The notes under the pieces are model-generated. The model worked only from the letters and a program-made list of their open reading frames with translations, was not told the DNA's origin and searched no databases. The translations under genes and the position numbers were made by a program. Positions 100-34,547 of a stretch of DNA of 64,000 nt are shown here, piece by piece. The first letter of the stretch is position 1, and each line of letters starts with the position of its first letter. This DNA is from Camelus dromedarius (taxonomy: Eukaryota): the NCBI RefSeq assembly GCF_036321535.1, contig NC_087452.1, positions 34,658,001 through 34,722,000 on the forward strand, given 5' to 3'.

Positions 100-855
100 A
101 CAAGAAATTGAATATAGTTCCCTGTGCTGTACAGTAAATCCCTGTTGTTTATCTATTTTATGTATAGAAATGTGTATCTGTTAATCTCCAACCCCTAATT
201 TATCCCACCCTGCCCTTTCCCCTTTGGTAACTATTGTTTGTTTTCTATGTCCATGAGTCTATTTTTAGCTTGGAAATAGAATTTGTATCATTTTTTTTAG
301 ATTCCACATATAAGTGGCTTTCTCTGTCTGACTTANNNNNNNNNNNNNNNNNNNNNNNNNNNNNNNNNNNNNNNNNNNNNNNNNNNNNNNNNNNNNNNNN
401 NNNNNNNNNNNNNNNNNNNNNNNNNNNNNNNNNNNNNNNNNNNNNNNNNNNNNNNNNNNNNNNNNNNNNNNNNNNNNNNNNNNNNNNNNNNNNNNNNNNN
501 NNNNNNNNNNNNNNNTTTGAATTATAGTTTTCTCTGGATACATGCCCAGGAGTGGGGTTGCTGGACTATATGGTTACTCTATTTTTAGTTTTGTAAGGAA
601 CCTCCATACTGCCCTCCATAGTGGCTGCACAAATTTACATTCCCACCAAGAGTGTAGGAGGGTTCTGTTTTCTGCACACTCTCTCTAGCATTTATCATTT
701 GTGGACTTTTGAATGATGGCCACTCTGGCTGGTGTGAAGTGAAGTGAAGTGAAGTAGTTTTGATTTGCATTTCTCTGACAATTAGTAATGTTGAGCATCT
801 TTTCATGTGCTTGTTGGCCATCTCTCTGTCCTCTTTGGAGAGATGTCTATTTAGG
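100..855 (-). mobile_element. L1 3' fragment (ORF2 end and 3' UTR), antisense, with N run
   Basis: Typical L1 antisense text (catgcccaggagtggggttgctgg...aacctccatactg) and ORF2 C-terminal translation [23 protein letters not shown]. Boundaries are approximate. Confidence 0.85.
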
Positions 856-2456: not shown

Positions 2457-3590
2457 TATTTATTTATTTTTAAATTTTTTAATTTAATTTTATTTTTAAA
2501 CATTTTTTATTGAGTTATAGTCATTTTACAGTGTTGTGTCAAATTCCAGCGTAAAGCACAATTTTCAGTTATACATGAACATACATACATTCATTGTCAC
2601 ATTCTCTTTCGCTGTGAGCCACCACAAGATCCTGTATGTATTTCCCTGTGCTACACAGTACAATCTTGTTTATCTATTCTACATTTTGAAATCTCAGTCC
2701 CTTCCCACCCCCCATCCCCCTGGCAACCACAAGTTTGTATTCTATGTCTATGAGTCTGTTTCTGTTTTGTATTTATGTTTTTTTTTAATTCCACATATGA
2801 GCGATCTCATATGGTATTTTTCTTTTTCTTTCTAGCTTACTTCACTTAGAATGACATTCTCCAATAACATCCATGTTGCTGCAAATGGNNNNNNNNNNNN
2901 NNNNNNNNNNNNNNNNNNNNNNNNNNNNNNNNNNNNNNNNNNNNNNNNNNNNNNNNNNNNNNNNNNNNNNNNNNNNNNNNNNNNNNNNNNNNNNNNNNNN
3001 NNNNNNNNNNNNNNNNNNNNNNNNNNNNNNNNNNNNNNNNNNTTTTGAAGTAGGGTTCCTTCTGGATATATGCCCAGGAGCAGGATTCCTGGGTCATGTG
3101 GTAAGTCCNNNNNNNNNNNNNNNNNNNNNNNNNNNNNNNNNNNNNNNNNNNNNNNNNNNNNNNNNNNNNNNNNNNNNNNNNNNNNNNNNNNNNNNNNNNN
3201 NNNNNNNNNNNNNNNNNNNNNNNNNNNNNNNNNNNNNNNNATGACGGCCATTCTGACTGGTGTGAGTTTTAATTTGCATTTCTCTGATAATTAGTGATAC
3301 TAAGCATTTTTTCATGTGCCTATTGACAATTTGTATTTCCTCCTTAGAGAATTCCTTGTTTAGGTCTTCTGCCCATTTTTGGATTGGGTTGTTTGTTTTT
3401 TTCTTATTAAGTCGTATGAGCTGCTCATATATTTTGGAGAACAAGCCTTTGTCGGTTTCATTTGCAAAACTTTTCTCCCATTCCATAGGTTTTCGTTTTG
3501 TTTTATTATGGTTTCCTTTGCTTCTAAGTTTAATTAGGTCCCATTTGTTTATTCTTGTTTTTATTTCTATTGCTTGGGTAGACTGCTCTA
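2457..3590 (-). mobile_element. 5'-truncated L1 with 16-bp TSD
   Basis: TSD CATCCTCCTGAAATTT at 2441-2456 and 3591-3606; T-rich tail on the left; ORF2 peptide [12 protein letters not shown]...MEWEK. The empty site is present in the paralog near 51577-51592. Confidence 0.92.
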
Positions 3591-7089: not shown

Positions 7090-9083
7090 ATGGAGACCCA
7101 GAGGGCCAGCCTCTCCCTGGGCCGCTGGCCACTGTGGCTACTGCTGCTGGGACTAGCGGTGCCTTGGGCCAGCGCCCAGGCCCTGAGCTATAGGGAGGCG
7201 GTGCTTCGAGCTGTGGATCGCCTCAATGAGCAGTCCTCAGACCCCAATCTCTACCGCCTCTTGGAGCTGGACCTGCCGCCCAAGGCTGTGAGTCGGGGAG
7301 GGGCTGGGGAGGGAGGTGTCTCCTGCCAGGCTTGGCCACACTGTCCCTCCCTTTGCTCGTGCTGTACCTCCTGTCAGGAAGGCACCTCTCCCTCTAAGTG
7401 GGATCCCACCTCTACAGAAATCCTCCCAGAGCTGGGTCCCCTCCCCTTGTGAGAGCCTTCTGCCTGGCATCTCTGCTGTGGGAACAGAGCCCTGACAGCC
7501 CGCTCAGGCTCCAGGGACTCCTGGGGGCTCCAGGGATACGCTGGGGTCACTGGCTCTGGGATGTGACTTCCCTGCTTCCAGTCCCCTGTGCACCCCATTG
7601 TCTTCCCACCAGGGAAGGGCTGTGCTCAGCCTTGGGGTTCCAGTGACAAGGTCTTTCCCTGCAGGTGTTCCCTGACTTCCCTCAGCCCCTCCAAGGGGAA
7701 CTGCCCCTCAGGAGAGCGGGTCTGAGTTCCCCTCCTGCTCCCTGTGAGCCTGGGAGCACAGGACCAGGCTGTGTCCTCCTCCCCTCTGCACCCAGCCCCC
7801 AGCCCAGGGCCAGGCACATGTGAGGGGCTGTCAAGGGGGCTGTCCTGCTGGGGGCAGGGACACAGGTCACACAAAGGAGCATGAGCCTGAGCCAGTCTCC
7901 CCACTTTGATCCTTGAGCAGGACGAGGACCCAGATGCCCCGAAGCCTGTGAGCTTCACGGTGAAGGAGACCGTGTGTCCCAGGAGGACACAGCAGCCACC
8001 GGAACAGTGTGACTTCAAGGAGAATGGGGTGAGGCTGGGGGCTTAAGGTGCTGGTGGGTGCCTCCCAAGACCCGAACAGGAGGCTTGGGGCGGGTTGTGG
8101 TTAGCAGCCCCTGGGGTGAGGCTGGTAGCTGGGGGTGCTGGTGGATGCCTCCCAAGAACAGGAACAGGAGGCTCGAAGGTGTGGTGTTATTTGCAGCCCC
8201 TGGGGTGAGGCTGGGTGGTTATGGCTCAGGGGTTACAGTGTGACCTGGTGTCTCCCCTTCCAGGTGGTGAAACAGTGTGTGGGGACAGTCACTCTGGACC
8301 AGTCCAGGGACCAACAGGACATCACCTGTGATGAGGTGAGTGACCCCTTCCAGGCTGCAGAGGCTGCTGCTGGGTCTGGTTTGTGGAACATCCTTTGGAC
8401 CAATTCTCCTCTGTGCCATCCCTGTAGCGGCAGGAAAGCCCTCCTCCCCTGGCTCCCCCTCACCCGAGCCCCAGGTCTCCAGGCCGGGCTCTGCAATCCC
8501 TTAGAGCAGTGGTTCTCTCATTGGGCTCCCCATACAGGACGTGTCAGAACGGCAAAAATTCTCAGGCCCCACTCTGACGTACTGAATCAGAGTCTAGGTT
8601 GGGGCCCAGTAATTTGTCTTGTAAGAGCCCTTGTAAGGGATTCTGTGCTGAAGTTTAAGAGGCACTGAGTAGGGTAATGGGCTTTTAGCCCCTGCTTCTG
8701 TCCTGCTTTGCTGGGAAGGGCTTGTGCCCCTGGGAAGCCCCTTGTCATCTCTGGGTCTTGGCTTCCTCCTCTGTGAGTGAGTGTAGGGATTCAACCATGT
8801 GCTCCAAAGGTCACACCCAGAGGGTGAACGGGGGCCTCAGGGCTCCTGGGGTGGCACTGGGAGGGGGATCAGCAGGTGAGGACAGGGGGTCTTGGGTTGA
8901 CCCTGGTTCCGACCCAGAAGAAATCTGTTTCCTCCTGGTTCACAGCTTCAGAGTGTTAGGAGCATTCGCCGGCCACGGCTGCCAAGGCCAAGGGTGCCAC
9001 GTCCATATATCCCACCAAGGATACCAAGGCCAGTATTGCCGCCACCACGGTTTCCTATTCCAAGGTTTCCGAGAGGACGGTGA
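7090..9083 (+). CDS. CATHL: Cathelicidin gene 1, 171-aa precursor; predicted mature Pro/Arg-rich peptide [39 protein letters not shown](-GR), PR-39/VicBac-like
   Basis: Exons 7090-7287, 7921-8028, 8264-8335, 8946-9083, all GT-AG and phase 0. [13 protein letters not shown] signal, [21 protein letters not shown] and four cathelin Cys are present. LQSV precedes the peptide and G-R precedes the stop. Confidence 0.97.
8507..8667. mobile_element. MER5A-like hAT element in intron 3 of gene 1, shared by all seven genes
   Basis: CAGTGGTTCTC...GAGGCACTG termini and tactgaatcagagtct core. Copies at about 16628-16792, 25799-25964, 33988-34152, 40974-41124, 56452-56610 and 61797-61955. Confidence 0.75.
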
Positions 9084-23856: not shown

Positions 23857-24490
23857 GGACAAGACATTTTTAGGTTGAGAAAGGCAGTGGAGAAGAATCC
23901 AGGAGAGGTGACAGATGGAGCGCAGCCCCTCACTGGCTGAGGGCTGAGTCTGGAGAGCAGGATGGAGGGTTCTTGACTGTCTGCCCAGGTGCTGGCTGAC
24001 TGCATCAGGCTTTGGTTGGAGGTGGTGCTGTCATCCATTCATCGAACTTTAACTAGATGCCTACTGGGTGCCAGGCGGTGTGTAGAGATGGAGGTTGTGT
24101 GGTGAATAAACTCCTTCAGCTTGATTCTCAGGAGGTCACAGTGAGGAGGCCGAGAGGGTTTAGGACACAGCCTGGTCCCTCCGTCTCCTGGAGGACTCAA
24201 CCCTCTGGAGCAACCCTGCTCATGAAACTGCCCCATGGGGCCCAGGAGAGGCCGAGATGCTGTGAGGGAGATGGAGAAACCATTTCTTCACCTTGCACAG
24301 GAGGCTGACTTCACCCACTGCCCAGCAATCCCCTGAGGCAAGAGCGGGGCCTGAGGCAAGTCCAGCTCACACCCTGGCCGGGGGCAGGGATGGGGCAGGT
24401 GGGGAAGGCTCCTGCTTGAGCAATTGCATCAGGCCCAGGCTGAGCATAAAGGAGGGTCCTGTGGGCTGGGAGGAGGCAGCCTCGGGGACC

Positions 24491-26357
24491 ATGGAGACCC
24501 AGAGGGCCAGCCTCTCCCTGGGCCGCTGGTCACTGTGGCTACTGCTGCTGGGACTAGCGGTGCCTTGGGCCAGCGCCCAGGCCCTGAGCTATAGGGAGGC
24601 GGTGCTTCGAGCTGTGGATCGCCTCAATGAGCAGTCCTCAGACCCCAATCTCTACCGCCTCCTGGAGCTGGACCTGCCGCCCAAGGCTGTGAGTCGGGGA
24701 GGGGCTGGGGAGGGAGGCGTCTCCCGCCAGGCTTGGCCACACTGTCCCTCCCTTTGCTCGTGCTGTACCTCCTGTCAGGAAGACACCTCTCCCTCTAGGT
24801 GGGATCCCACCTCTCACAGACATCCTCCCAGAGCTGGGTCCCCTCCCCTTGTGAGAGCCTTCTGCCTGGCATCTCTGCTGTGGGAACAGAGCCCTGACAG
24901 CCCTCTCAGGCACCAGGGACTCCTGGGGGGCTCCAGGGATACGCTGGGGTCACTGGCTCTGGGATGTGACTTCCCTGCTTCCAAACCCCTGTGCATGCCA
25001 TTGTCTCCCCACCAGAGAAGGGGTGTGCTCAGCCTGGAGATTCCAGTGACAAGGTCTTTCCCTGCAGGTGCCCCTGACTTCCCTCAGCCCCTCAAAGGGG
25101 GATGTGCTTCTCATGAGATGGGGTCTGAGGTCCCCTCCTGCTCCCTGTGTGCCTGGGAGCCCAGGACCAGGCTGTGTCCTCCTCCCCTCTACACCCAGCC
25201 CGCAGCCCAGGGCGAGGCACATGGGATGGGCTTTCAAGAGGGCTGTTCTGCTGCGGGGCAGGGACACAGGTCACCCAAGGAAGCATGAGCCTGAGCCAGT
25301 CTCCCCACTTCGATCCTTGAGCAGGACGAGGACCCAGACGCCCCAAAGCCTGTGAGCTTCACGGTGAAGGAGACCGTGTGTCCCAGGAGGACACAGCTGC
25401 CACCGGAGCAGTGTGACTTCAAGGAGAAAGGGGTGAGGCTGGGAGCTGAGAACGCTGGCGGATGCCTCCCAATGACCCGAACAAGAGGCTTCGGAGGGTG
25501 GTTAGCAGCCCCTGGGGTGAGGCTGTGTGTTTATGGCTCAGGGATTCCAGTCTGAACTGGAGGTTCCCCTTCCAGGTGGTGAAACAGTGTTTGGGGACAG
25601 TCACTCTGGACCAGGTCAAGGACCAAATAGACATCAGTTGTAATAAGGTGAGTGGCCCTTCTTGTTTTGAGCTGCTCTGGGGAGAGGTGTGGAACATCAT
25701 TTGGACCAGTTTTGTTCTTGTTCATTCAGGGCTTCCTACCCTGGCTCCCCCCTCACCTGAGCCCAAGTCTCCAGCCTGGGCTCTGCAATCCCTTGGAGCA
25801 GTGGTTTGTTCTCTAAGTGGCATTATCACCTGGGAACTATTGGAAAGGCAGCTTCTTAGTCCACATTCAGACCTACTGAGACAAAGTTGGGGTGGGTCCC
25901 AGAAATTTGTATTTTAAGAAGCCTTCCTGGGGATTCTGACTGTGCTGAAGTTTGAGAGGCACTGACTACAGTAATGGGATTTCTGCTTCTGCTTCTGTCC
26001 AGCTGTGGTGGCCAGTGATCCGGGGAGGCCTTGGCATCTCTGTGTCCTGGTTTTCTCATCTGTCTATGGGAGTAGGGATTCAACCACATGCTCCAAAGTT
26101 ATAGCCACAGAGTGAATGGGACCCAAGCCTCCAGGAGTGGCTCAGGAGTAGGATGTGTAGAAAGGGACCTGAATCATTTTGATTCTGGATCAGTACTGAC
26201 AAGAAGCCTGTTTCTTCCTGCTTCACAGCTCCAGAGTGTAAGGGGATTTTTTCCACCACCATTCCCACCTGGACCCTTCCCATTTCCCCCTTTCCCACCA
26301 ATCCCGCCAATACCACCATTTCCATTTCCGCGGCCATTTGTTAGAAGACGACGGTGA
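24491..26357 (+). CDS. CATHL: Cathelicidin gene 3, 168-aa precursor; predicted mature [38 protein letters not shown]
   Basis: Exons 24491-24688, 25325-25432, 25576-25647, 26229-26357 with GT-AG sites and four Cys. AATAAA at 26460-26465. Confidence 0.96.
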
Positions 26358-29300
26358 AGGATTGGCTGATACTTTGCCCATCAGAGGACTCTGCTGAATT
26401 GTGAGCCCCCGGAAGTCCTAAGGGTCTTCTTTATTCTGGCTCAGTGTTTCAGATTCTGAAATAAATTGTTCTGAAAACAACTTCCTCTGGTATCTCCCAC
26501 TTACTGTCACCAGGTCCTAAACGCTGGGAGGCCGAGGTTGTGTGTCGGTGTGTTTGCGTGTTTGTGTCTGTGAATGTGGTCACTTCCGTGAACGCAGAGA
26601 TGGGTGTGGCAGCTGTTCCTTCCAGGATGTCGGGGAGAGGCAGCAGGGCCGGGAGGGACAGGACAGGGCTCCATTCCCAGGAAACCCATGCCCTTCACAC
26701 TCCCCTGCACTCCTCCTCCTCCACCAAGTAGGGGCTTAAGGAGACCTAGTCTGTGTGCAGTGCTGCTGGGGATGCTGTTCCTGCTGGTATGGAGGTGACA
26801 GTCCAGGAGGACCAGGTGGCTTGTTAATCACTCAGGGAGACGCAGTTCACTCTCCTGCTGGTGGGCTCTAAGGTCAGCCTGCAGGTACAATATGCAGATT
26901 GTTCCACTTCCCTCACAATCTAAACTCTGCAAGAGCCAACCCTTCCTGGCTTTTGCTCTGGGCATTGAGACAATTCAGTCTTTCTCCTGCGGGGTCTCAG
27001 ATTTCAGGTGTGGGCTTGTGTTCAGGGATCCAATGGTACCACATTTGGCACCATTAGAAGGAAGCCTCCTGCTCATCGGGGTGAAGGGCTCTGCCTGAGT
27101 GAGAGACACACACAGTGACACACAGGCCACATGTCTGTTTGCCTGGGGGTTTCAGACACTGTCCCTGTCCTGCCCACTCCCCACTCTGTAGCTGACCTTT
27201 GCTGGGGGGCAGACTGGAATCACGGGGGAGGCGGCAGTCCCGGGAGCAGCCTCAACCAACCATCGCTGGGACTTTTCCCTCATTGGTGGAAACGTCTCTT
27301 CTGTTCCTCACTCCTTGGGGGGCCCACTCCCAGATGTGTCCCCCCTCCCTGAGGTCCCCAGCTGGGTGGAGCCCCTGTCCCCACTTCACTGACCTGTCTA
27401 TTGACTTGTCCTCTTCTGATGTCGATTCTGCCCGGTCTCACTTCCCTATTTTTCTGCTGGTGCTTCGAAGGAATCGCCTCCCAGAGCACCTGCTTCCTCT
27501 TGAATGCTGGCCTGAGCTCTGCTCCTGGGCCGACCTGCACCAACACACAGAGCCCCGTGTGTCAGAGGGACAGCGGGCGGGACCGCGCAGAGCATGGGCT
27601 CTGTAATCTGTCAGGCTCGTCTGTTCTTGGGGAGCAGGTGGGGCTGATTTGAGGCAGCTTAGAGGAACCCATGCTTCTCACTCTACGTCACCCCAGGTTG
27701 AGGCAGGAAACCTCACAGAGGAAACCCAGGGACTGTGTCGTGTCTCTGCCACAGCATACAAGACTGCAAGAGCTACTTGTTAAAATTTCAGGATTTTCTG
27801 AGTTGGTCATTAAACTCTTGGTCGCTTGAAATCTGCCTTGGTGGAAGAATTTACAGCATGGAAATCAGCAAATGCTACACGTCAGGCCCATCACAGCTGG
27901 TCCATCACTGTCCAACCTGAGAGAGGGCTCACTCATCAGGATGATATGGGCTGTGCTGATGTCATCTGTTTGCAGTTGTCTCCCAGGATTGCTGATCCTG
28001 CTTCAGGAGGGTGGGACATGGATGCTGATGGCTCTCAGGTGCCATAATCCACGGCTTCAAGGCCTCCCCAAGAGAAGCCTGGGGGTTTTGTCCTCTCTGC
28101 CCCCATTCTGTGGCTGGTGACTGACTATGAGGGGACATCAGAGCCCAGCCCCTGTCTCAGTCACTCCTAAAGCAGGGGTGCAATTCTGGTTCCTGGGCTT
28201 TTCTAGGTGAGGCTGAAGCTGGGCTCAGAGGGAGCACCTCTCTGCTCAGCTCCTTCCTCTGCACAACCCTGCTCTCCTCCCCCTCCTGCTGACCAAACCC
28301 CTCAATTAATCACATGACTCTGAATTCCCAGCTCAGGCCCTGCTTCTAGAGAACCGGCCTAGGATGGCGGTGGAGCTGTGTGGAGCCCGGCCAGCTCATC
28401 CCAGGTGGCTCGGGTGTGGGGCCTGACGTGGAGCTGAGAGAGAGGAGAGGCAGAGGTGTGCAGGGTAGGGGTGCGGGAGAGGGGTTGGGGCGGGGCAGCG
28501 CTGGCAGCCAAGGGGCCCTGAGGAGTTTACAAAGTGCTCAGAGTAGGACAGGAGGCCGAGAGCCCGGGGCGATGACTCCTAGTGGTTTCCCGGTGTTTGT
28601 GCAGATGTGGAGGCCACGGACCTCAGTGGGGGCAGCCTCAGAGATCTGGGGGCACAGAAGTCCCACGCAGTGAGGGGAGGAGAAGCAAGAGGTAAGGAAG
28701 AGGGGAGGCCATGAATGGGGACACACAGGGGCTTCTCCTTCCCCCAGACCCCCGCTGTGCCAGGGAGGGACACTGGGCTGTTATCAGGCAAGGTCCTTGT
28801 TGATGTGGCCCTTGACCCCCTCTTCTGAGGTCTCCAGAGTCATTTTCGGGGCCCCTATATGTGACAGGGCACTTCACATTGTCATGAATAGGGCAGAGAA
28901 AGAGAATTCTGAGGAGTATGGACATCTGAAAGCCATTGCTCCTCTGCCTGTGTGGCCCTAGGCAGAAGAAGAGATCTTTCTGGGCCTATGTCTATCTGTA
29001 ATTGGGACCCACATAGCCTAATTTGAGAGGATGGTCAATGGCTTAGCTCGAAAAACAAGGTCGAGTACCACATAGGGGCTGAATCTGAGGCGGAGGCTGA
29101 TGGAGTCTAGGAGACCATAGTTAGTCTGGGTCCATCTCAGGGCACAGATCTGGCTCGTGTGTCGGAGCAGGGACCCAGAGAGACACTTGGAATCCCCATC
29201 AGAACAGCAGGAGGGAAATACACGTCATTCTGTCCTGAGCGAGCAGAACTGGCCCGTCTGCACGAGCCTTTGGCGTCTGGTCCTTACTAGTCAGCAGCTG

Positions 29301-32659: not shown

Positions 32660-34547
32660 ATGGAGACCCAGAGGGCCAGCCTCTCCCTGGGCCGCTTGTC
32701 ACTGTGGCTATTGCTGCTGGGACTAGCGGTGCCTTGGGCCAGCGCCCAGGCCCTGAGCTATAGGGAGGCGGTGCTTCGAGCTGTGGATCGCCTCAATGAG
32801 CAGTCCTCAGACCCCAATCTCTACCGCCTCTTGGAGCTGGACCTGCCGCCCAAGGCTGTGAGTCCGGGAGGGGCTGGGGAGGGAGGCGTCTCCCGCCAGG
32901 CTTAGCCACACTGTCCCTCCTTTTGCTCGCGCTGTACCTCCTGTCAGGAAGGCACCTCTCCCTCTAAGTGGGATCCCACTCTACAGAAATCTTCCCAGAG
33001 CTGGGTCCCCTCCCGTTGTGAGAGCCTTCTGCCTGGCATCTCTGCTGTGGGAACAGAGCCCAGACAGTCCGCTCAGGCTCCAGGGACTCCTGGGGGCTCC
33101 AGGGATACGCTGGGGTCACTGGCTCTGGGATGTGACTTCCCTGCTTCCAATCCCCTGTGCAACCCATTGTCTCCCCACCAGGGAAGGGCTGTGCTCAGCC
33201 TGGGGGGTTCCAGTGACAAGGTCTTTCCCTGCAGGTGTCCCATGACTTCCCTCAGCCCCTCCAAGGGGAGCTGCCCCTCAGGAGAGCGGGTCTGAGGTCC
33301 CCTCCTGCTCCCTGTGTGCCTGGGAGCCCAGGACCAGGCTGTGACCTCCTCTCCTCTGCACCCAGCTCCCAGCCCAGGGCCAGGCACATGGACAGGCTCT
33401 CAAAGGGGCTTGTTATCCTGGGGGCAGGGGGATATGTCACACATAGAAGCATGAGCCTGAGCCAGTCTCCCCACTTTGATCCTTCAGCAGGACGAGGACC
33501 TAGATGCCCCAAAGCCTGTGAGCTTCACGGTGAAGGAGACCGTGTGTCCCAGGAGGACACTGCTGCCACCGGAGCAGTGTGACTTCAAGGAGAATGGGGT
33601 GAGGTTGGGGGCTTAGGGCGCTGGTGGGTGCCTCCCAAGACCCGAACAGAAGGCTTGGGGCGGGTGGTCGTTAGCAGCCCCTGGGGTGAGGAAGGGTGTT
33701 TATGGCTCAGGGGTTCCAGTGTGACCTGAAGTCTCCCCTTCCAGGTGGTGAAACAGTGTTTGGGGACAGTCAACCTGTACCAGCTCAGAGACAACTTCGA
33801 TATAACATGTAATGAGGTGAGTGACCCCTTCTGGGCTGCAGAAGCTATTGGTGGAGGTGGTGTGTGGAACAGCCTTTGGGCCAATTCCCCTCTGTGCCAT
33901 CCCTGTAGCGACAGGAGAGCACTCCTCCCCTGGCTCGCCCTCATCCGAGCCCCAGGTCTCCAGGCCGGGCTCTGCAATCCCTTAGAGCAGTGGTTCTCTC
34001 ATTGGGATCCCCACTTGGCAACTAGAGAAAAAGGCTGATTCTCAGGCATGACTCAGACCTACGGAAGCACTGTCTGTGTTGGAGCCCAGTAATTTCTATT
34101 TTAAGAGCCCTTCTGAAGGATTTCTGAGTGTGCTGAAGCTTGAGAGGCAGTGACTATAGACAGGACCTTTCTGCCCCTGTTCCCGTACAGCTTTTCTGAG
34201 ATGGGTTTGTGCCCCTGGGAAGCCCCCTGTCATCTCTGGACCTTGGTCCTCATCTGTCTGTGGGAGAGATGATTCAACCACGTGCTCCAAGTGACACAGA
34301 CAAGGAGGTCAAATGGTGCCTTAACTCTCCTTCGGTGTTCCAAGATGGAAGATTTTCAGGTGGGGAGGGATCTGGTCTTGTCCCTAAGTCAGTCCTCACA
34401 AGAATCCTGTTTTTTTCTGCTGCACAGCTCCAAAGTGTTGGGTTATTTGGCCGGATTCGTGATTCCATCCGTAACCGTGTGAACAGGGTTCGAGATGCGA
34501 TTGGGAAAGTAATCGGATACGTTGGTGATAAAATTCGCCCAGGGTAG
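32660..34547 (+). CDS. CATHL: Cathelicidin gene 4, 165-aa precursor; predicted mature [34 protein letters not shown](-G), BMAP-34/PMAP-37-like
   Basis: Exons 32660-32857, 33491-33598, 33745-33816, 34428-34547 with GT-AG sites. AATAAA at 34595-34600. Confidence 0.96.

What the first reader, a model, noticed from the sequence alone, without database searches (positions are those of the whole stretch)
26229..26357. Gene 3: Pro/Phe-rich peptide with charge concentrated at the C-terminus
[38 protein letters not shown] has 18 Pro, 9 Phe and 6 Arg in 38 aa, and 5 of the Arg are in the last 8 residues. Known Pro-rich cathelicidins (PR-39, Bac5, Bac7) carry the cationic cluster at the N-terminus, where it is needed for uptake and ribosome binding. 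The end AGA CGA CGG TGA differs from gene 1's AGA GGA CGG TGA by one base, so the amidation Gly appears to have become Arg (inference). Carboxypeptidase trimming of the tail is also possible. The mechanism may differ from classic proline-rich AMPs.
Basis: partly seen in the sequence, partly recalled or inferred. Interest (0 to 1): 0.72.

Follow-up and report, generated by a model that had tools for sequence, protein, structure and literature searches.

The report
Known camel proline-rich cathelicidin, amidation lost
This is the last exon of an intact, transcribed dromedary camel immune-peptide (cathelicidin) gene whose exact peptide was already listed in a 2022 survey of camelid genomes; its unusual four-arginine tail arose when camels lost the glycine that signals C-terminal amidation in llamas and alpacas.

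Summary
Window 26229-26357 is exon 4 of a four-exon cathelicidin gene. The 38-residue peptide has 18 Pro, 9 Phe and 6 Arg, with 5 Arg in the last 8 residues.

It is not new. The 168-aa product equals RefSeq "protegrin-2-like" of Camelus dromedarius and C. ferus. The peptide is listed as a "Vp38-like cathelicidin" in Table S2 of Panteleev et al. 2022 (PMC9146984), without any activity data.

New here:
Alpaca orthologs end AGA GGA CGA CGG TGA and camels end AGA AGA CGA CGG TGA. The change is therefore GGA>AGA at 26346-26348, not at the CGA codon.
- Camels also lack the two N-terminal Arg that alpaca has (positions 2 and 6) and carry Arg at 31. The 24-residue Pro/Phe core is unchanged.
- Spliced exon 3-exon 4 transcripts occur in two independent RNA studies.
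- The Bac7/oncocin ribosome-binding motif is absent.

Most likely it is a hydrophobic, weakly cationic, membrane-directed peptide like dolphin Tur1B, not a classic translation inhibitor. That part is inference. The scan's follow-ups on neighbouring genes pointed to the same 2022 survey.

The parts
24445..24450 (+). TATA-like box (CATAAA) 46 nt upstream of the ATG
   Evidence: same arrangement described for alpaca cathelicidin genes in PMC9146984
24491..24688 (+). Exon 1: signal peptide and start of the cathelin domain (66 codons)
   Evidence: GT donor at 24689; an exon 1-exon 2 joint 24688>25325 is seen in a cDNA contig, which may come from a paralog
25325..25432 (+). Exon 2 (108 nt). A tandem acceptor 3 nt upstream (25322) gives the 169-aa RefSeq isoform
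25576..25647 (+). Exon 3 (72 nt), end of the cathelin domain (...DQIDISCNK)
   Evidence: Pfam PF00666 covers residues 30-129, E 2.5e-48
26229..26357 (+). Exon 4 coding part: LQSV elastase-site linker, 38-residue peptide and TGA stop
   Evidence: exon 3-exon 4 spliced joint in RNA runs X9 and X14
26241..26354 (+). Predicted mature Vp38-like peptide (P0126:131-168). The (PPX)4 core lies at residues 16-27
   Evidence: listed in Table S2 of PMC9146984. The cleavage site is inferred by homology and was not tested
26346..26348 (+). Codon 36 of the peptide, AGA (Arg). It is GGA (Gly, amidation donor) in both alpaca copies
26460..26465 (+). Polyadenylation signal AATAAA, 103 nt after the stop
   Evidence: an RNA contig covers 26342-26492

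Best explanation
SHOWN. This is exon 4 of an intact, spliced, transcribed cathelicidin gene of the dromedary. RefSeq calls it 'protegrin-2-like'; the literature calls the family 'Vp38-like cathelicidin'. It is one of seven cathelicidin genes in the window and has a second, inverted copy about 66 kb away. The family is found only in camelids in the searches run here. In the Camelus lineage the tail ...R-G-R-R, kept in alpaca, became ...R-R-R-R through GGA>AGA. This removed the Gly that serves as amidation donor in Bac5, PR-39, rumicidins and the alpaca ortholog. Camel differs from alpaca at six residues, all at the ends of the peptide. Four of the six involve Arg (positions 2 and 6 without Arg, positions 31 and 36 with Arg). 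The 24-residue Pro/Phe/Ile core shows only synonymous changes.

INFERRED. The precursor is stored in neutrophil granules and cut by elastase after the Val of LQSV. The released peptide is an extended polyproline-II rod. In its core F15, F18, I21, I24 and F27 recur every third residue, so they would fall on one face of such a rod. Charge sits only at the ends. The peptide lacks the N-terminal Arg-rich (R/K)xx(R/Y)LPRPR pharmacophore and is very hydrophobic. It therefore most likely acts at the bacterial envelope (membrane or LPS association and permeabilisation, perhaps supporting its co-stored partners), as shown for low-charge aromatic cetacean peptides Tur1B and Neo1. It is less likely to block the ribosomal exit tunnel. 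The unamidated Arg4 tail either stays as the main cationic anchor or is trimmed. Trimming could come from basic carboxypeptidases, or from elastase after Val34, whose V|R context repeats the activation site.
For: Gene model and identity to P0126.

Pfam cathelicidin domain.

Publication and annotation.

Ortholog codons. Codon-by-codon differences. Core 0 nonsynonymous and 4 synonymous changes versus ends 6 and 1, Fisher p = 0.015.

Homology of the tail with gene 1 and the extra CGA codon.

All other retrieved proline-rich precursors end in G[KR]R or GR.

The amidation role of this tail in Bac5, PR-39 and rumicidins, and its protection from carboxypeptidases: PMC11484942.

Spliced exon 3-exon 4 contigs with no mismatches in two RNA studies.

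Motif absent here but present in CamBac of the same window.

Precedent that low-charge, hydrophobic proline-rich peptides with a disrupted motif permeabilise membranes and barely inhibit translation: PMC7582929.

Only two protein clusters (Camelus, Vicugna) carry this peptide type.
Against: - No activity, uptake, processing or mass-spectrometry data exist for this peptide or its alpaca ortholog, so the whole mechanism is by analogy.
- The direction of the N-terminal changes rests on resemblance to alpaca/Lama and to hippo and pig PR-39-type N-termini, not on a resolved tree. The cathelin-domain tree is a polytomy.
- dN/dS over exon 4 is 0.45 from only 11 differences and is not informative on its own.
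- RNA support is from low-depth assembled contigs (depth 2.7-3.3) of reproductive-tract samples. It is not from neutrophils or bone marrow, and it cannot tell the two gene copies apart.
- Six Arg would still allow SbmA-type uptake.
Confidence: 0.5

Rival explanations
1. It is a classic non-lytic proline-rich antimicrobial peptide. It would be taken up through SbmA and bind the 70S exit tunnel like Bac7, Bac5 or PR-39, with only the position of the charge altered.
For: Its exon 4 is homologous at DNA level to that of the Bac7-like gene 1, including the tail and the 3' flank. The alpaca ortholog starts RRFFPRP, resembling hippo and pig PR-39-type N-termini. One PRP triplet remains.
Against: The consensus (R/K)xx(R/Y)LPRPR is absent, and only one Arg lies in the first 30 residues. 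Cetacean peptides with a degraded motif and low charge barely inhibit translation.
Confidence: 0.15
2. It is mainly a host-directed polyproline-II ligand for immunomodulation, as PR-39 binds SH3 domains, and not a direct antimicrobial.
For: Net charge is very low if the tail is trimmed. Three overlapping FPx(hydrophobic)P matches lie in the conserved core, and the core is under purifying selection.
Against: Such motif matches are expected from the composition alone. No SH3 class I or II motif is present in the camel peptide. No experimental hint exists.
Confidence: 0.15
3. It is a drifting, functionally redundant paralog. Loss of the amidation Gly and of the N-terminal Arg would be neutral decay of a peptide that no longer matters.
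For: Both features that matter in known relatives (N-terminal Arg, amidation signal) are gone. Exon 4 divergence from alpaca (8.5%) exceeds that of introns 2 and 3 (3-4%).
Against: The open frame, splice sites and length of 38 residues are kept in three Camelus species and in alpaca, and in two copies per genome. The core has 0 nonsynonymous and 4 synonymous changes. Correctly spliced RNA is present.
Confidence: 0.12
4. It is a reverse-polarity ribosome binder of the apidaecin or drosocin type, in which the free cationic C-terminus points to the peptidyl-transferase centre.
For: It has a free (non-amidated) C-terminus preceded by PRPF and an Arg cluster. This is only a loose resemblance to the C-terminal pharmacophore of type II peptides (my own knowledge of Api137 and drosocin).
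Against: The apidaecin C-terminal motif is absent. No mammalian type II peptide is known. The hydrophobic core has no counterpart in apidaecins.
Confidence: 0.03

Closest known systems
Vp38-like cathelicidins / VpCATH-38 of alpaca (Panteleev et al. 2022, PMC9146984)
   Same: Same family and orthologous gene. The peptide has 38 residues, an identical 24-residue core with the (PPX)4 motif and the same four-exon gene. The Camelus sequence itself is listed in Table S2.
   Different: Alpaca keeps RR at the N-terminus, Arg6 and the GRR amidation tail. Camel has G2, P6, R31, F33, V34 and R36. Neither peptide has been tested functionally.
Bac5 / PR-39 type proline-rich cathelicidins (cattle, pig, hippo)
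   Same: Same precursor architecture and LQSV|R processing context. Pro-Pro-X periodicity is present, and the ancestral tail is Gly plus two basic residues.
   Different: Those peptides carry many Arg spread along the chain, with a strongly cationic N-terminus needed for activity. Here Arg is replaced by Phe or Ile in the repeats, and in camels the Gly is lost.
Tur1B and Neo1, low-charge aromatic cetacean proline-rich cathelicidins (PMC7582929)
   Same: These are hydrophobic, aromatic-rich, lower-charge peptides with a disrupted ribosome-binding motif. They provide the functional precedent for a switch from translation inhibition to membrane action.
   Different: They are Trp-rich, not Phe-rich, keep an N-terminal RR, and belong to a different lineage. 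The likeness concerns how the peptide may work, not membership.
Prophenins (pig) and the prophenin-like gene 5 of this window
   Same: Pro/Phe-rich cathelicidin peptides. Gene 5 lies 15 kb downstream in the same cluster.
   Different: Prophenins are built of many FPPPNFPxP-type decamer repeats. The peptide here has no such repeats, only a weak 9-bp by 2.9 array.
CamBac / VicBac (gene 1 of this window)
   Same: Its exon 4, tail and 3' flank are alignable at DNA level, and it sits in the same cluster.
   Different: CamBac has 13 Arg, the full Bac7 motif and a GR amidation tail. VicBac is a proven translation inhibitor with IC50 0.5 uM.

Membership tests
Cathelicidins (PF00666) | N-terminal signal peptide plus a cathelin-like domain with four conserved Cys | tested here: met
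   Pfam PF00666 E 2.5e-48 over residues 30-129. Four Cys are present in exons 2-3.
Cathelicidins (PF00666) | Four exons, with the variable mature peptide in exon 4 | tested here: met
   Exon sizes are 198/108/72/129 nt with GT..AG introns. The exon 2-3 and exon 3-4 joints are seen in RNA contigs.
Cathelicidins (PF00666) | Release of the peptide by elastase after Val | not testable with these tools
   The LQSV|R context is present, as in Bac5 and PR-39 precursors. Cleavage itself has not been observed.
Vp38-like cathelicidins (Panteleev 2022) | 38-residue proline-rich peptide with a central (PPX)4 motif | tested here: met
   Length is 38, and [12 protein letters not shown] lies at residues 16-27. 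The sequence is listed for C. dromedarius in Table S2.
Type I ribosome-targeting proline-rich peptides (Bac7/oncocin-like) | Consensus (R/K)xx(R/Y)LPRPR in a cationic N-terminal part | tested here: not met
   No match was found. Only Arg1 lies in the first 30 residues. CamBac, the positive control in the same window, matches at residues 4-12.
Type I ribosome-targeting proline-rich peptides (Bac7/oncocin-like) | Inhibition of bacterial translation and SbmA-dependent uptake | not testable with these tools
   This needs cell-free translation and sbmA-deletion assays.
C-terminally amidated cathelicidins (Bac5/PR-39/rumicidin type) | Precursor ends in Gly followed by one or two basic residues | tested here: not met
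   Camel ends RRRR with no Gly. Alpaca ends GRR. All other retrieved proline-rich precursors end G[KR]R or GR.
Prophenins | Tandem decamer repeats of the FPPPNFPGPR type | tested here: not met
   Only a 9-bp period with 2.9 copies and score 38 was found. No decamer repeat is present in the peptide.

The most novel reading that the evidence does not exclude
In Camelus one G>A change turned a removable amidation signal into an Arg4 tail, while the N-terminal Arg residues were lost. The result would be a proline-rich cathelicidin of inverted charge polarity that works in a way not yet described for mammalian peptides. Two examples are a tail-gated peptide whose charge is removed by the activating elastase (V34|R35) or by carboxypeptidases, and a peptide that binds its target in reverse orientation through a free cationic C-terminus.
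Probability: 0.08. Interest if true: 0.65.

Novelty: already known. Interest (0 to 1): 0.28.

Why it matters
The gene and peptide are already in RefSeq and in a published table, so there is no discovery of a new entity.

What remains of value is a small, clean evolutionary case. A single transition abolished the amidation signal that is otherwise universal among the proline-rich cathelicidins retrieved here. By the published table and text, a parallel loss occurred in the Lama Bac7-like peptide. The change is coupled with a shift of the few charges from the N- to the C-terminus around an invariant hydrophobic polyproline core.

The family is untested. Comparing the camel (free Arg4 tail) and alpaca (amidated) orthologs would be a natural experiment on what terminal charge and amidation do for proline-rich host-defence peptides.

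Tried and rejected
- Full-text searches for three substrings of the peptide found nothing. The peptide appears only in a supplementary table, whose machine-read text has dropped letters. I therefore relied on database proteins and DNA for the exact sequences.
- A word-based search with the peptide region returned only the Camelus and Vicugna clusters. This does not prove absence elsewhere.
- The ESM Atlas feature search gave no usable hit.
- The cathelin-domain tree left the family in a polytomy, so orthology to the Bac5/PR-39 lineage cannot be claimed.
- Exon 4 dN/dS is 0.45 on 11 differences, too few to test selection.
- Raw-read RNA run X21 laid no reads, so it gives no test.
- The supplement of the 2026 dromedary paper holds no peptide from this gene.
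- The look-up of encoding contigs had no record for P0010 and P0129.
- No structure or complex prediction was run. A 38-residue Pro-rich peptide would give an uninformative model, and I make no protein-binding claim.
- I rejected a prophenin classification.

Full report
WHAT IS THERE

The window holds a tandem cluster of cathelicidin genes. A six-frame scan finds seven units carrying the conserved signal/cathelin exons, six on the + strand and one on the - strand. Their exon-4 peptides are:
- gene 1, Bac7-like ("CamBac")
- gene 2, a 23-residue helical peptide
- gene 3, the peptide of this finding
- gene 4, a 35-residue helical peptide
- gene 5, a long prophenin-like peptide
- genes 6 and 7, 29- and 24-residue helical peptides

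Gene 3 runs from ATG 24491 to TGA 26355-26357. Its exons are 24491-24688, 25325-25432, 25576-25647 and 26229-26357. All introns are GT..AG. A TATA-like box lies 46 nt before the ATG and an AATAAA lies at 26460.

So are the quoted end codons of genes 3 and 1.

IDENTITY

- The spliced 168-aa product is letter-for-letter P0126. That protein is RefSeq XP_064352647.1 (Camelus dromedarius) and XP_032314496.1 (C. ferus), named "protegrin-2-like".
- The window is identical over 2.4 kb to the dromedary assembly GCA_036321535.1, chromosome record CM070326.1, near 34.68 Mb.
- Pfam places residues 30-129 in the cathelicidin family with E 2.5e-48.

ALREADY DESCRIBED

Panteleev et al. 2022 (PMC9146984) mined all seven living camelids. 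[quoted passage not shown] The alpaca member is VpCATH-38.

Their Table S2 lists "Vp38-like cathelicidins" for C. dromedarius, C. ferus and C. bactrianus, ending ...PFVRRRR. It lists alpaca, vicuna, guanaco and llama ending ...PIIRGRR. The stored text is machine-read and drops letters.

They characterised only VicBac. The only other paper found that names VpCATH-38 is a 2026 dromedary study, which uses it as a BLAST query and tests other peptides. I found no activity data for this family.

A word-based search of 5.8 billion proteins with the peptide region returned only the Camelus and Vicugna clusters.

THE TAIL

I fetched the genomic DNA of orthologs.
- Both alpaca copies end ATT ATT AGA GGA CGA CGG TGA (I I R G R R stop).
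- Dromedary (both copies), Bactrian (both copies) and wild camel end TTT GTT AGA AGA CGA CGG TGA.

The Gly-to-Arg replacement is therefore GGA>AGA at peptide codon 36 (26346-26348).

The DNA alignment shows that gene 1's GGA lines up with the alpaca GGA. It also shows that the Vp38 lineage has one additional CGA codon. The one-base likeness is a register artefact.

The idea itself holds. Every other proline-rich precursor retrieved ends in Gly plus one or two basic residues. These are pig PR-39, hippo, whales, musk deer, a Bos hybrid entry, bison Bac5-like, CamBac and alpaca Vp38. This tail is the recognised amidation signal in Bac5, PR-39 and rumicidins and is thought to protect against carboxypeptidases (PMC11484942). 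Gly is thus the likely ancestral state.

According to the 2022 paper, the Lama Bac7-like peptide also lacks the GR dipeptide that its orthologs have. In the machine-read Table S2 it ends in an Arg run. That would be a parallel loss.

OTHER CHANGES

Camel and alpaca differ at 11 of 126 exon-4 coding positions.
- Six are replacements: positions 2 (R in alpaca, G in camel), 6 (R/P), 31 (G/R), 33 (I/F), 34 (I/V) and 36 (G/R).
- Five are synonymous.
- All replacements lie in residues 1-6 and 31-38. The 24-residue core (7-30) has four synonymous and no replacement changes (Fisher p = 0.015).
- Four of the six replacements move Arg. Alpaca has Arg at 1, 2, 6, 35 (plus the removable 37, 38). Camel has Arg at 1, 31, 35-38.
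- An FPRPF pentapeptide sits at residues 4-8 in alpaca and at 29-33 in camel.

Alpaca, the Lama species and the hippo and pig PR-39-type peptides all begin RR(F/R). The camel state therefore looks derived. This polarity is an inference, because the cathelin-domain tree supports only the camel+alpaca clade (98/93) and leaves its sister unresolved.

Exon 4 is more diverged (8.5%) than introns 2-3 (3-4%) and exons 1-3 (1.3%), as is usual for cathelicidin peptides. A dN/dS of 0.45 from so few sites says little.

EXPRESSION

Twenty public runs hold the stretch or part of it. I laid four of them on 24400-26520.

Assembled contigs of two RNA-seq libraries from different studies (X9, X14; reproductive-tract samples) join 25647 to 26229, GT..AG. 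Exon 3 and 104-109 nt of exon 4 show no mismatches. X9 also shows the exon 2-exon 3 joint. A spliced form cannot come from contaminating DNA, so the gene is transcribed and correctly spliced.

Limits of this evidence:
- Depth is low (2.7-3.3).
- The tissue is not myeloid.
- The contigs stop just before site 26336, which distinguishes the two dromedary copies.
- The 3'UTR contig of X9 carries the Bactrian/wild-camel type letters at 26373 and 26429.
- Raw-read run X21 laid nothing, so it is no test.

HOW IT LIKELY WORKS

Shown:
- The Bac7/oncocin consensus (R/K)xx(R/Y)LPRPR is absent, while CamBac in the same window has it.
- Only one PRP triplet remains.
- There is no amidation signal.

Read directly from the sequence: in the core, F15, F18, I21, I24 and F27 recur with period 3. 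On a polyproline-II helix (three residues per turn; established knowledge) they would form one hydrophobic ridge, with Pro on the other faces and charge only at the ends.

Precedent: cetacean proline-rich cathelicidins with lower charge, higher hydrophobicity and a disrupted motif (Tur1B, Neo1, Del1) permeabilise membranes and barely inhibit translation. The canonical ones do the reverse (PMC7582929). In VicBac the hydrophobic C-terminal part provides membrane penetration.

I therefore rate a membrane/envelope-directed, weakly cationic peptide, possibly acting with its co-stored partners, as the most likely mode (about 0.4-0.5). The rivals are:
- classic SbmA/ribosome action, about 0.15
- a host-directed polyproline ligand, about 0.15
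- neutral decay, about 0.12
- an apidaecin-like reverse binder, about 0.03

The fate of the Arg4 tail is open. Without amidation it is exposed to basic carboxypeptidases. The V34|R35 bond also repeats the V|R activation context, so elastase itself might remove it. Removal would leave a peptide with only two Arg. None of this has been tested.

OTHER COPIES

Each genome examined has two inverted copies with the same peptide.
- Dromedary: 34.616 Mb (reverse strand) and 34.682 Mb, about 1% diverged within the gene.
- Bactrian: 66 kb apart and identical over the compared 2.4 kb.
- Alpaca: 87 kb apart.

VERDICT

The entity is already known from RefSeq and a 2022 supplementary table, so novelty is low.

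The modest new points are the exact mutational history of the tail, the charge relocation around an invariant core, and direct RNA evidence of splicing. The scan's earlier follow-ups on genes 2 and 5 of this window reached the same 2022 source.

Noticed in passing
L007 (dromedary CM070326.1 34614401-34620249, reverse strand), about 40 kb upstream of the window start; also L001/L002 and L003/L004: A second, inverted, intact copy of this gene with the identical peptide exists in dromedary, about 1% diverged. Bactrian camel also has two copies, identical over 2.4 kb, which may reflect gene conversion or an assembly duplicate. Alpaca has two as well. The cluster seems to contain an old inverted segmental duplication.
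   Followed up: partly
window 25319-25327: A tandem NAGNAG acceptor (gag|cag|GAC) precedes exon 2. It explains the RefSeq 169-aa (extra Gln) and 168-aa isoforms. The one cDNA contig seen uses 25325.
   Followed up: partly
window 9060-9083 (gene 1 tail) and Table S2 of PMC9146984: The paper states that the Lama Bac7-like ortholog of gene 1 (LamBac) lacks the GR dipeptide kept in Camelus and Vicugna. In the machine-read table it ends in an Arg run. This looks like a parallel loss of the amidation Gly in a paralog.
   Followed up: no
window 26250-26264 and 26325-26339: The pentapeptide FPRPF sits at residues 4-8 in alpaca but at residues 29-33 in camels. It is as if the single internal Arg had been moved from one end of the invariant core to the other.
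   Followed up: partly
window 34428-34547 (gene 4 exon 4): The 35-residue helical peptide encoded here differs at three positions from the 'CdProtegrin-3' tested in the 2026 dromedary paper (PMC12872550). It matches the second dromedary Vp35-like entry of the 2022 table. Dromedary therefore has at least two Vp35-like genes.
   Followed up: no
window 24481: One cDNA contig (run X7) ends at 24481 with loose letters that look like a template-switch oligo (from memory, not tested). This hints at a transcription start about 10 nt before the ATG. The contig has mismatches and may belong to a paralog or another camelid.
   Followed up: no
proteins P0001 and P0013 (GenBank models of C. dromedarius and C. 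ferus): Some deposited gene models fuse cathelin exons of two or three neighbouring genes into one chimeric protein. Names such as 'PMAP-23' or 'protegrin-2-like' in this cluster are automatic and misleading.
   Followed up: no
window 336-515, 2889-3042, 3109-3240: Three runs of N (466 bases in all).
   Followed up: no
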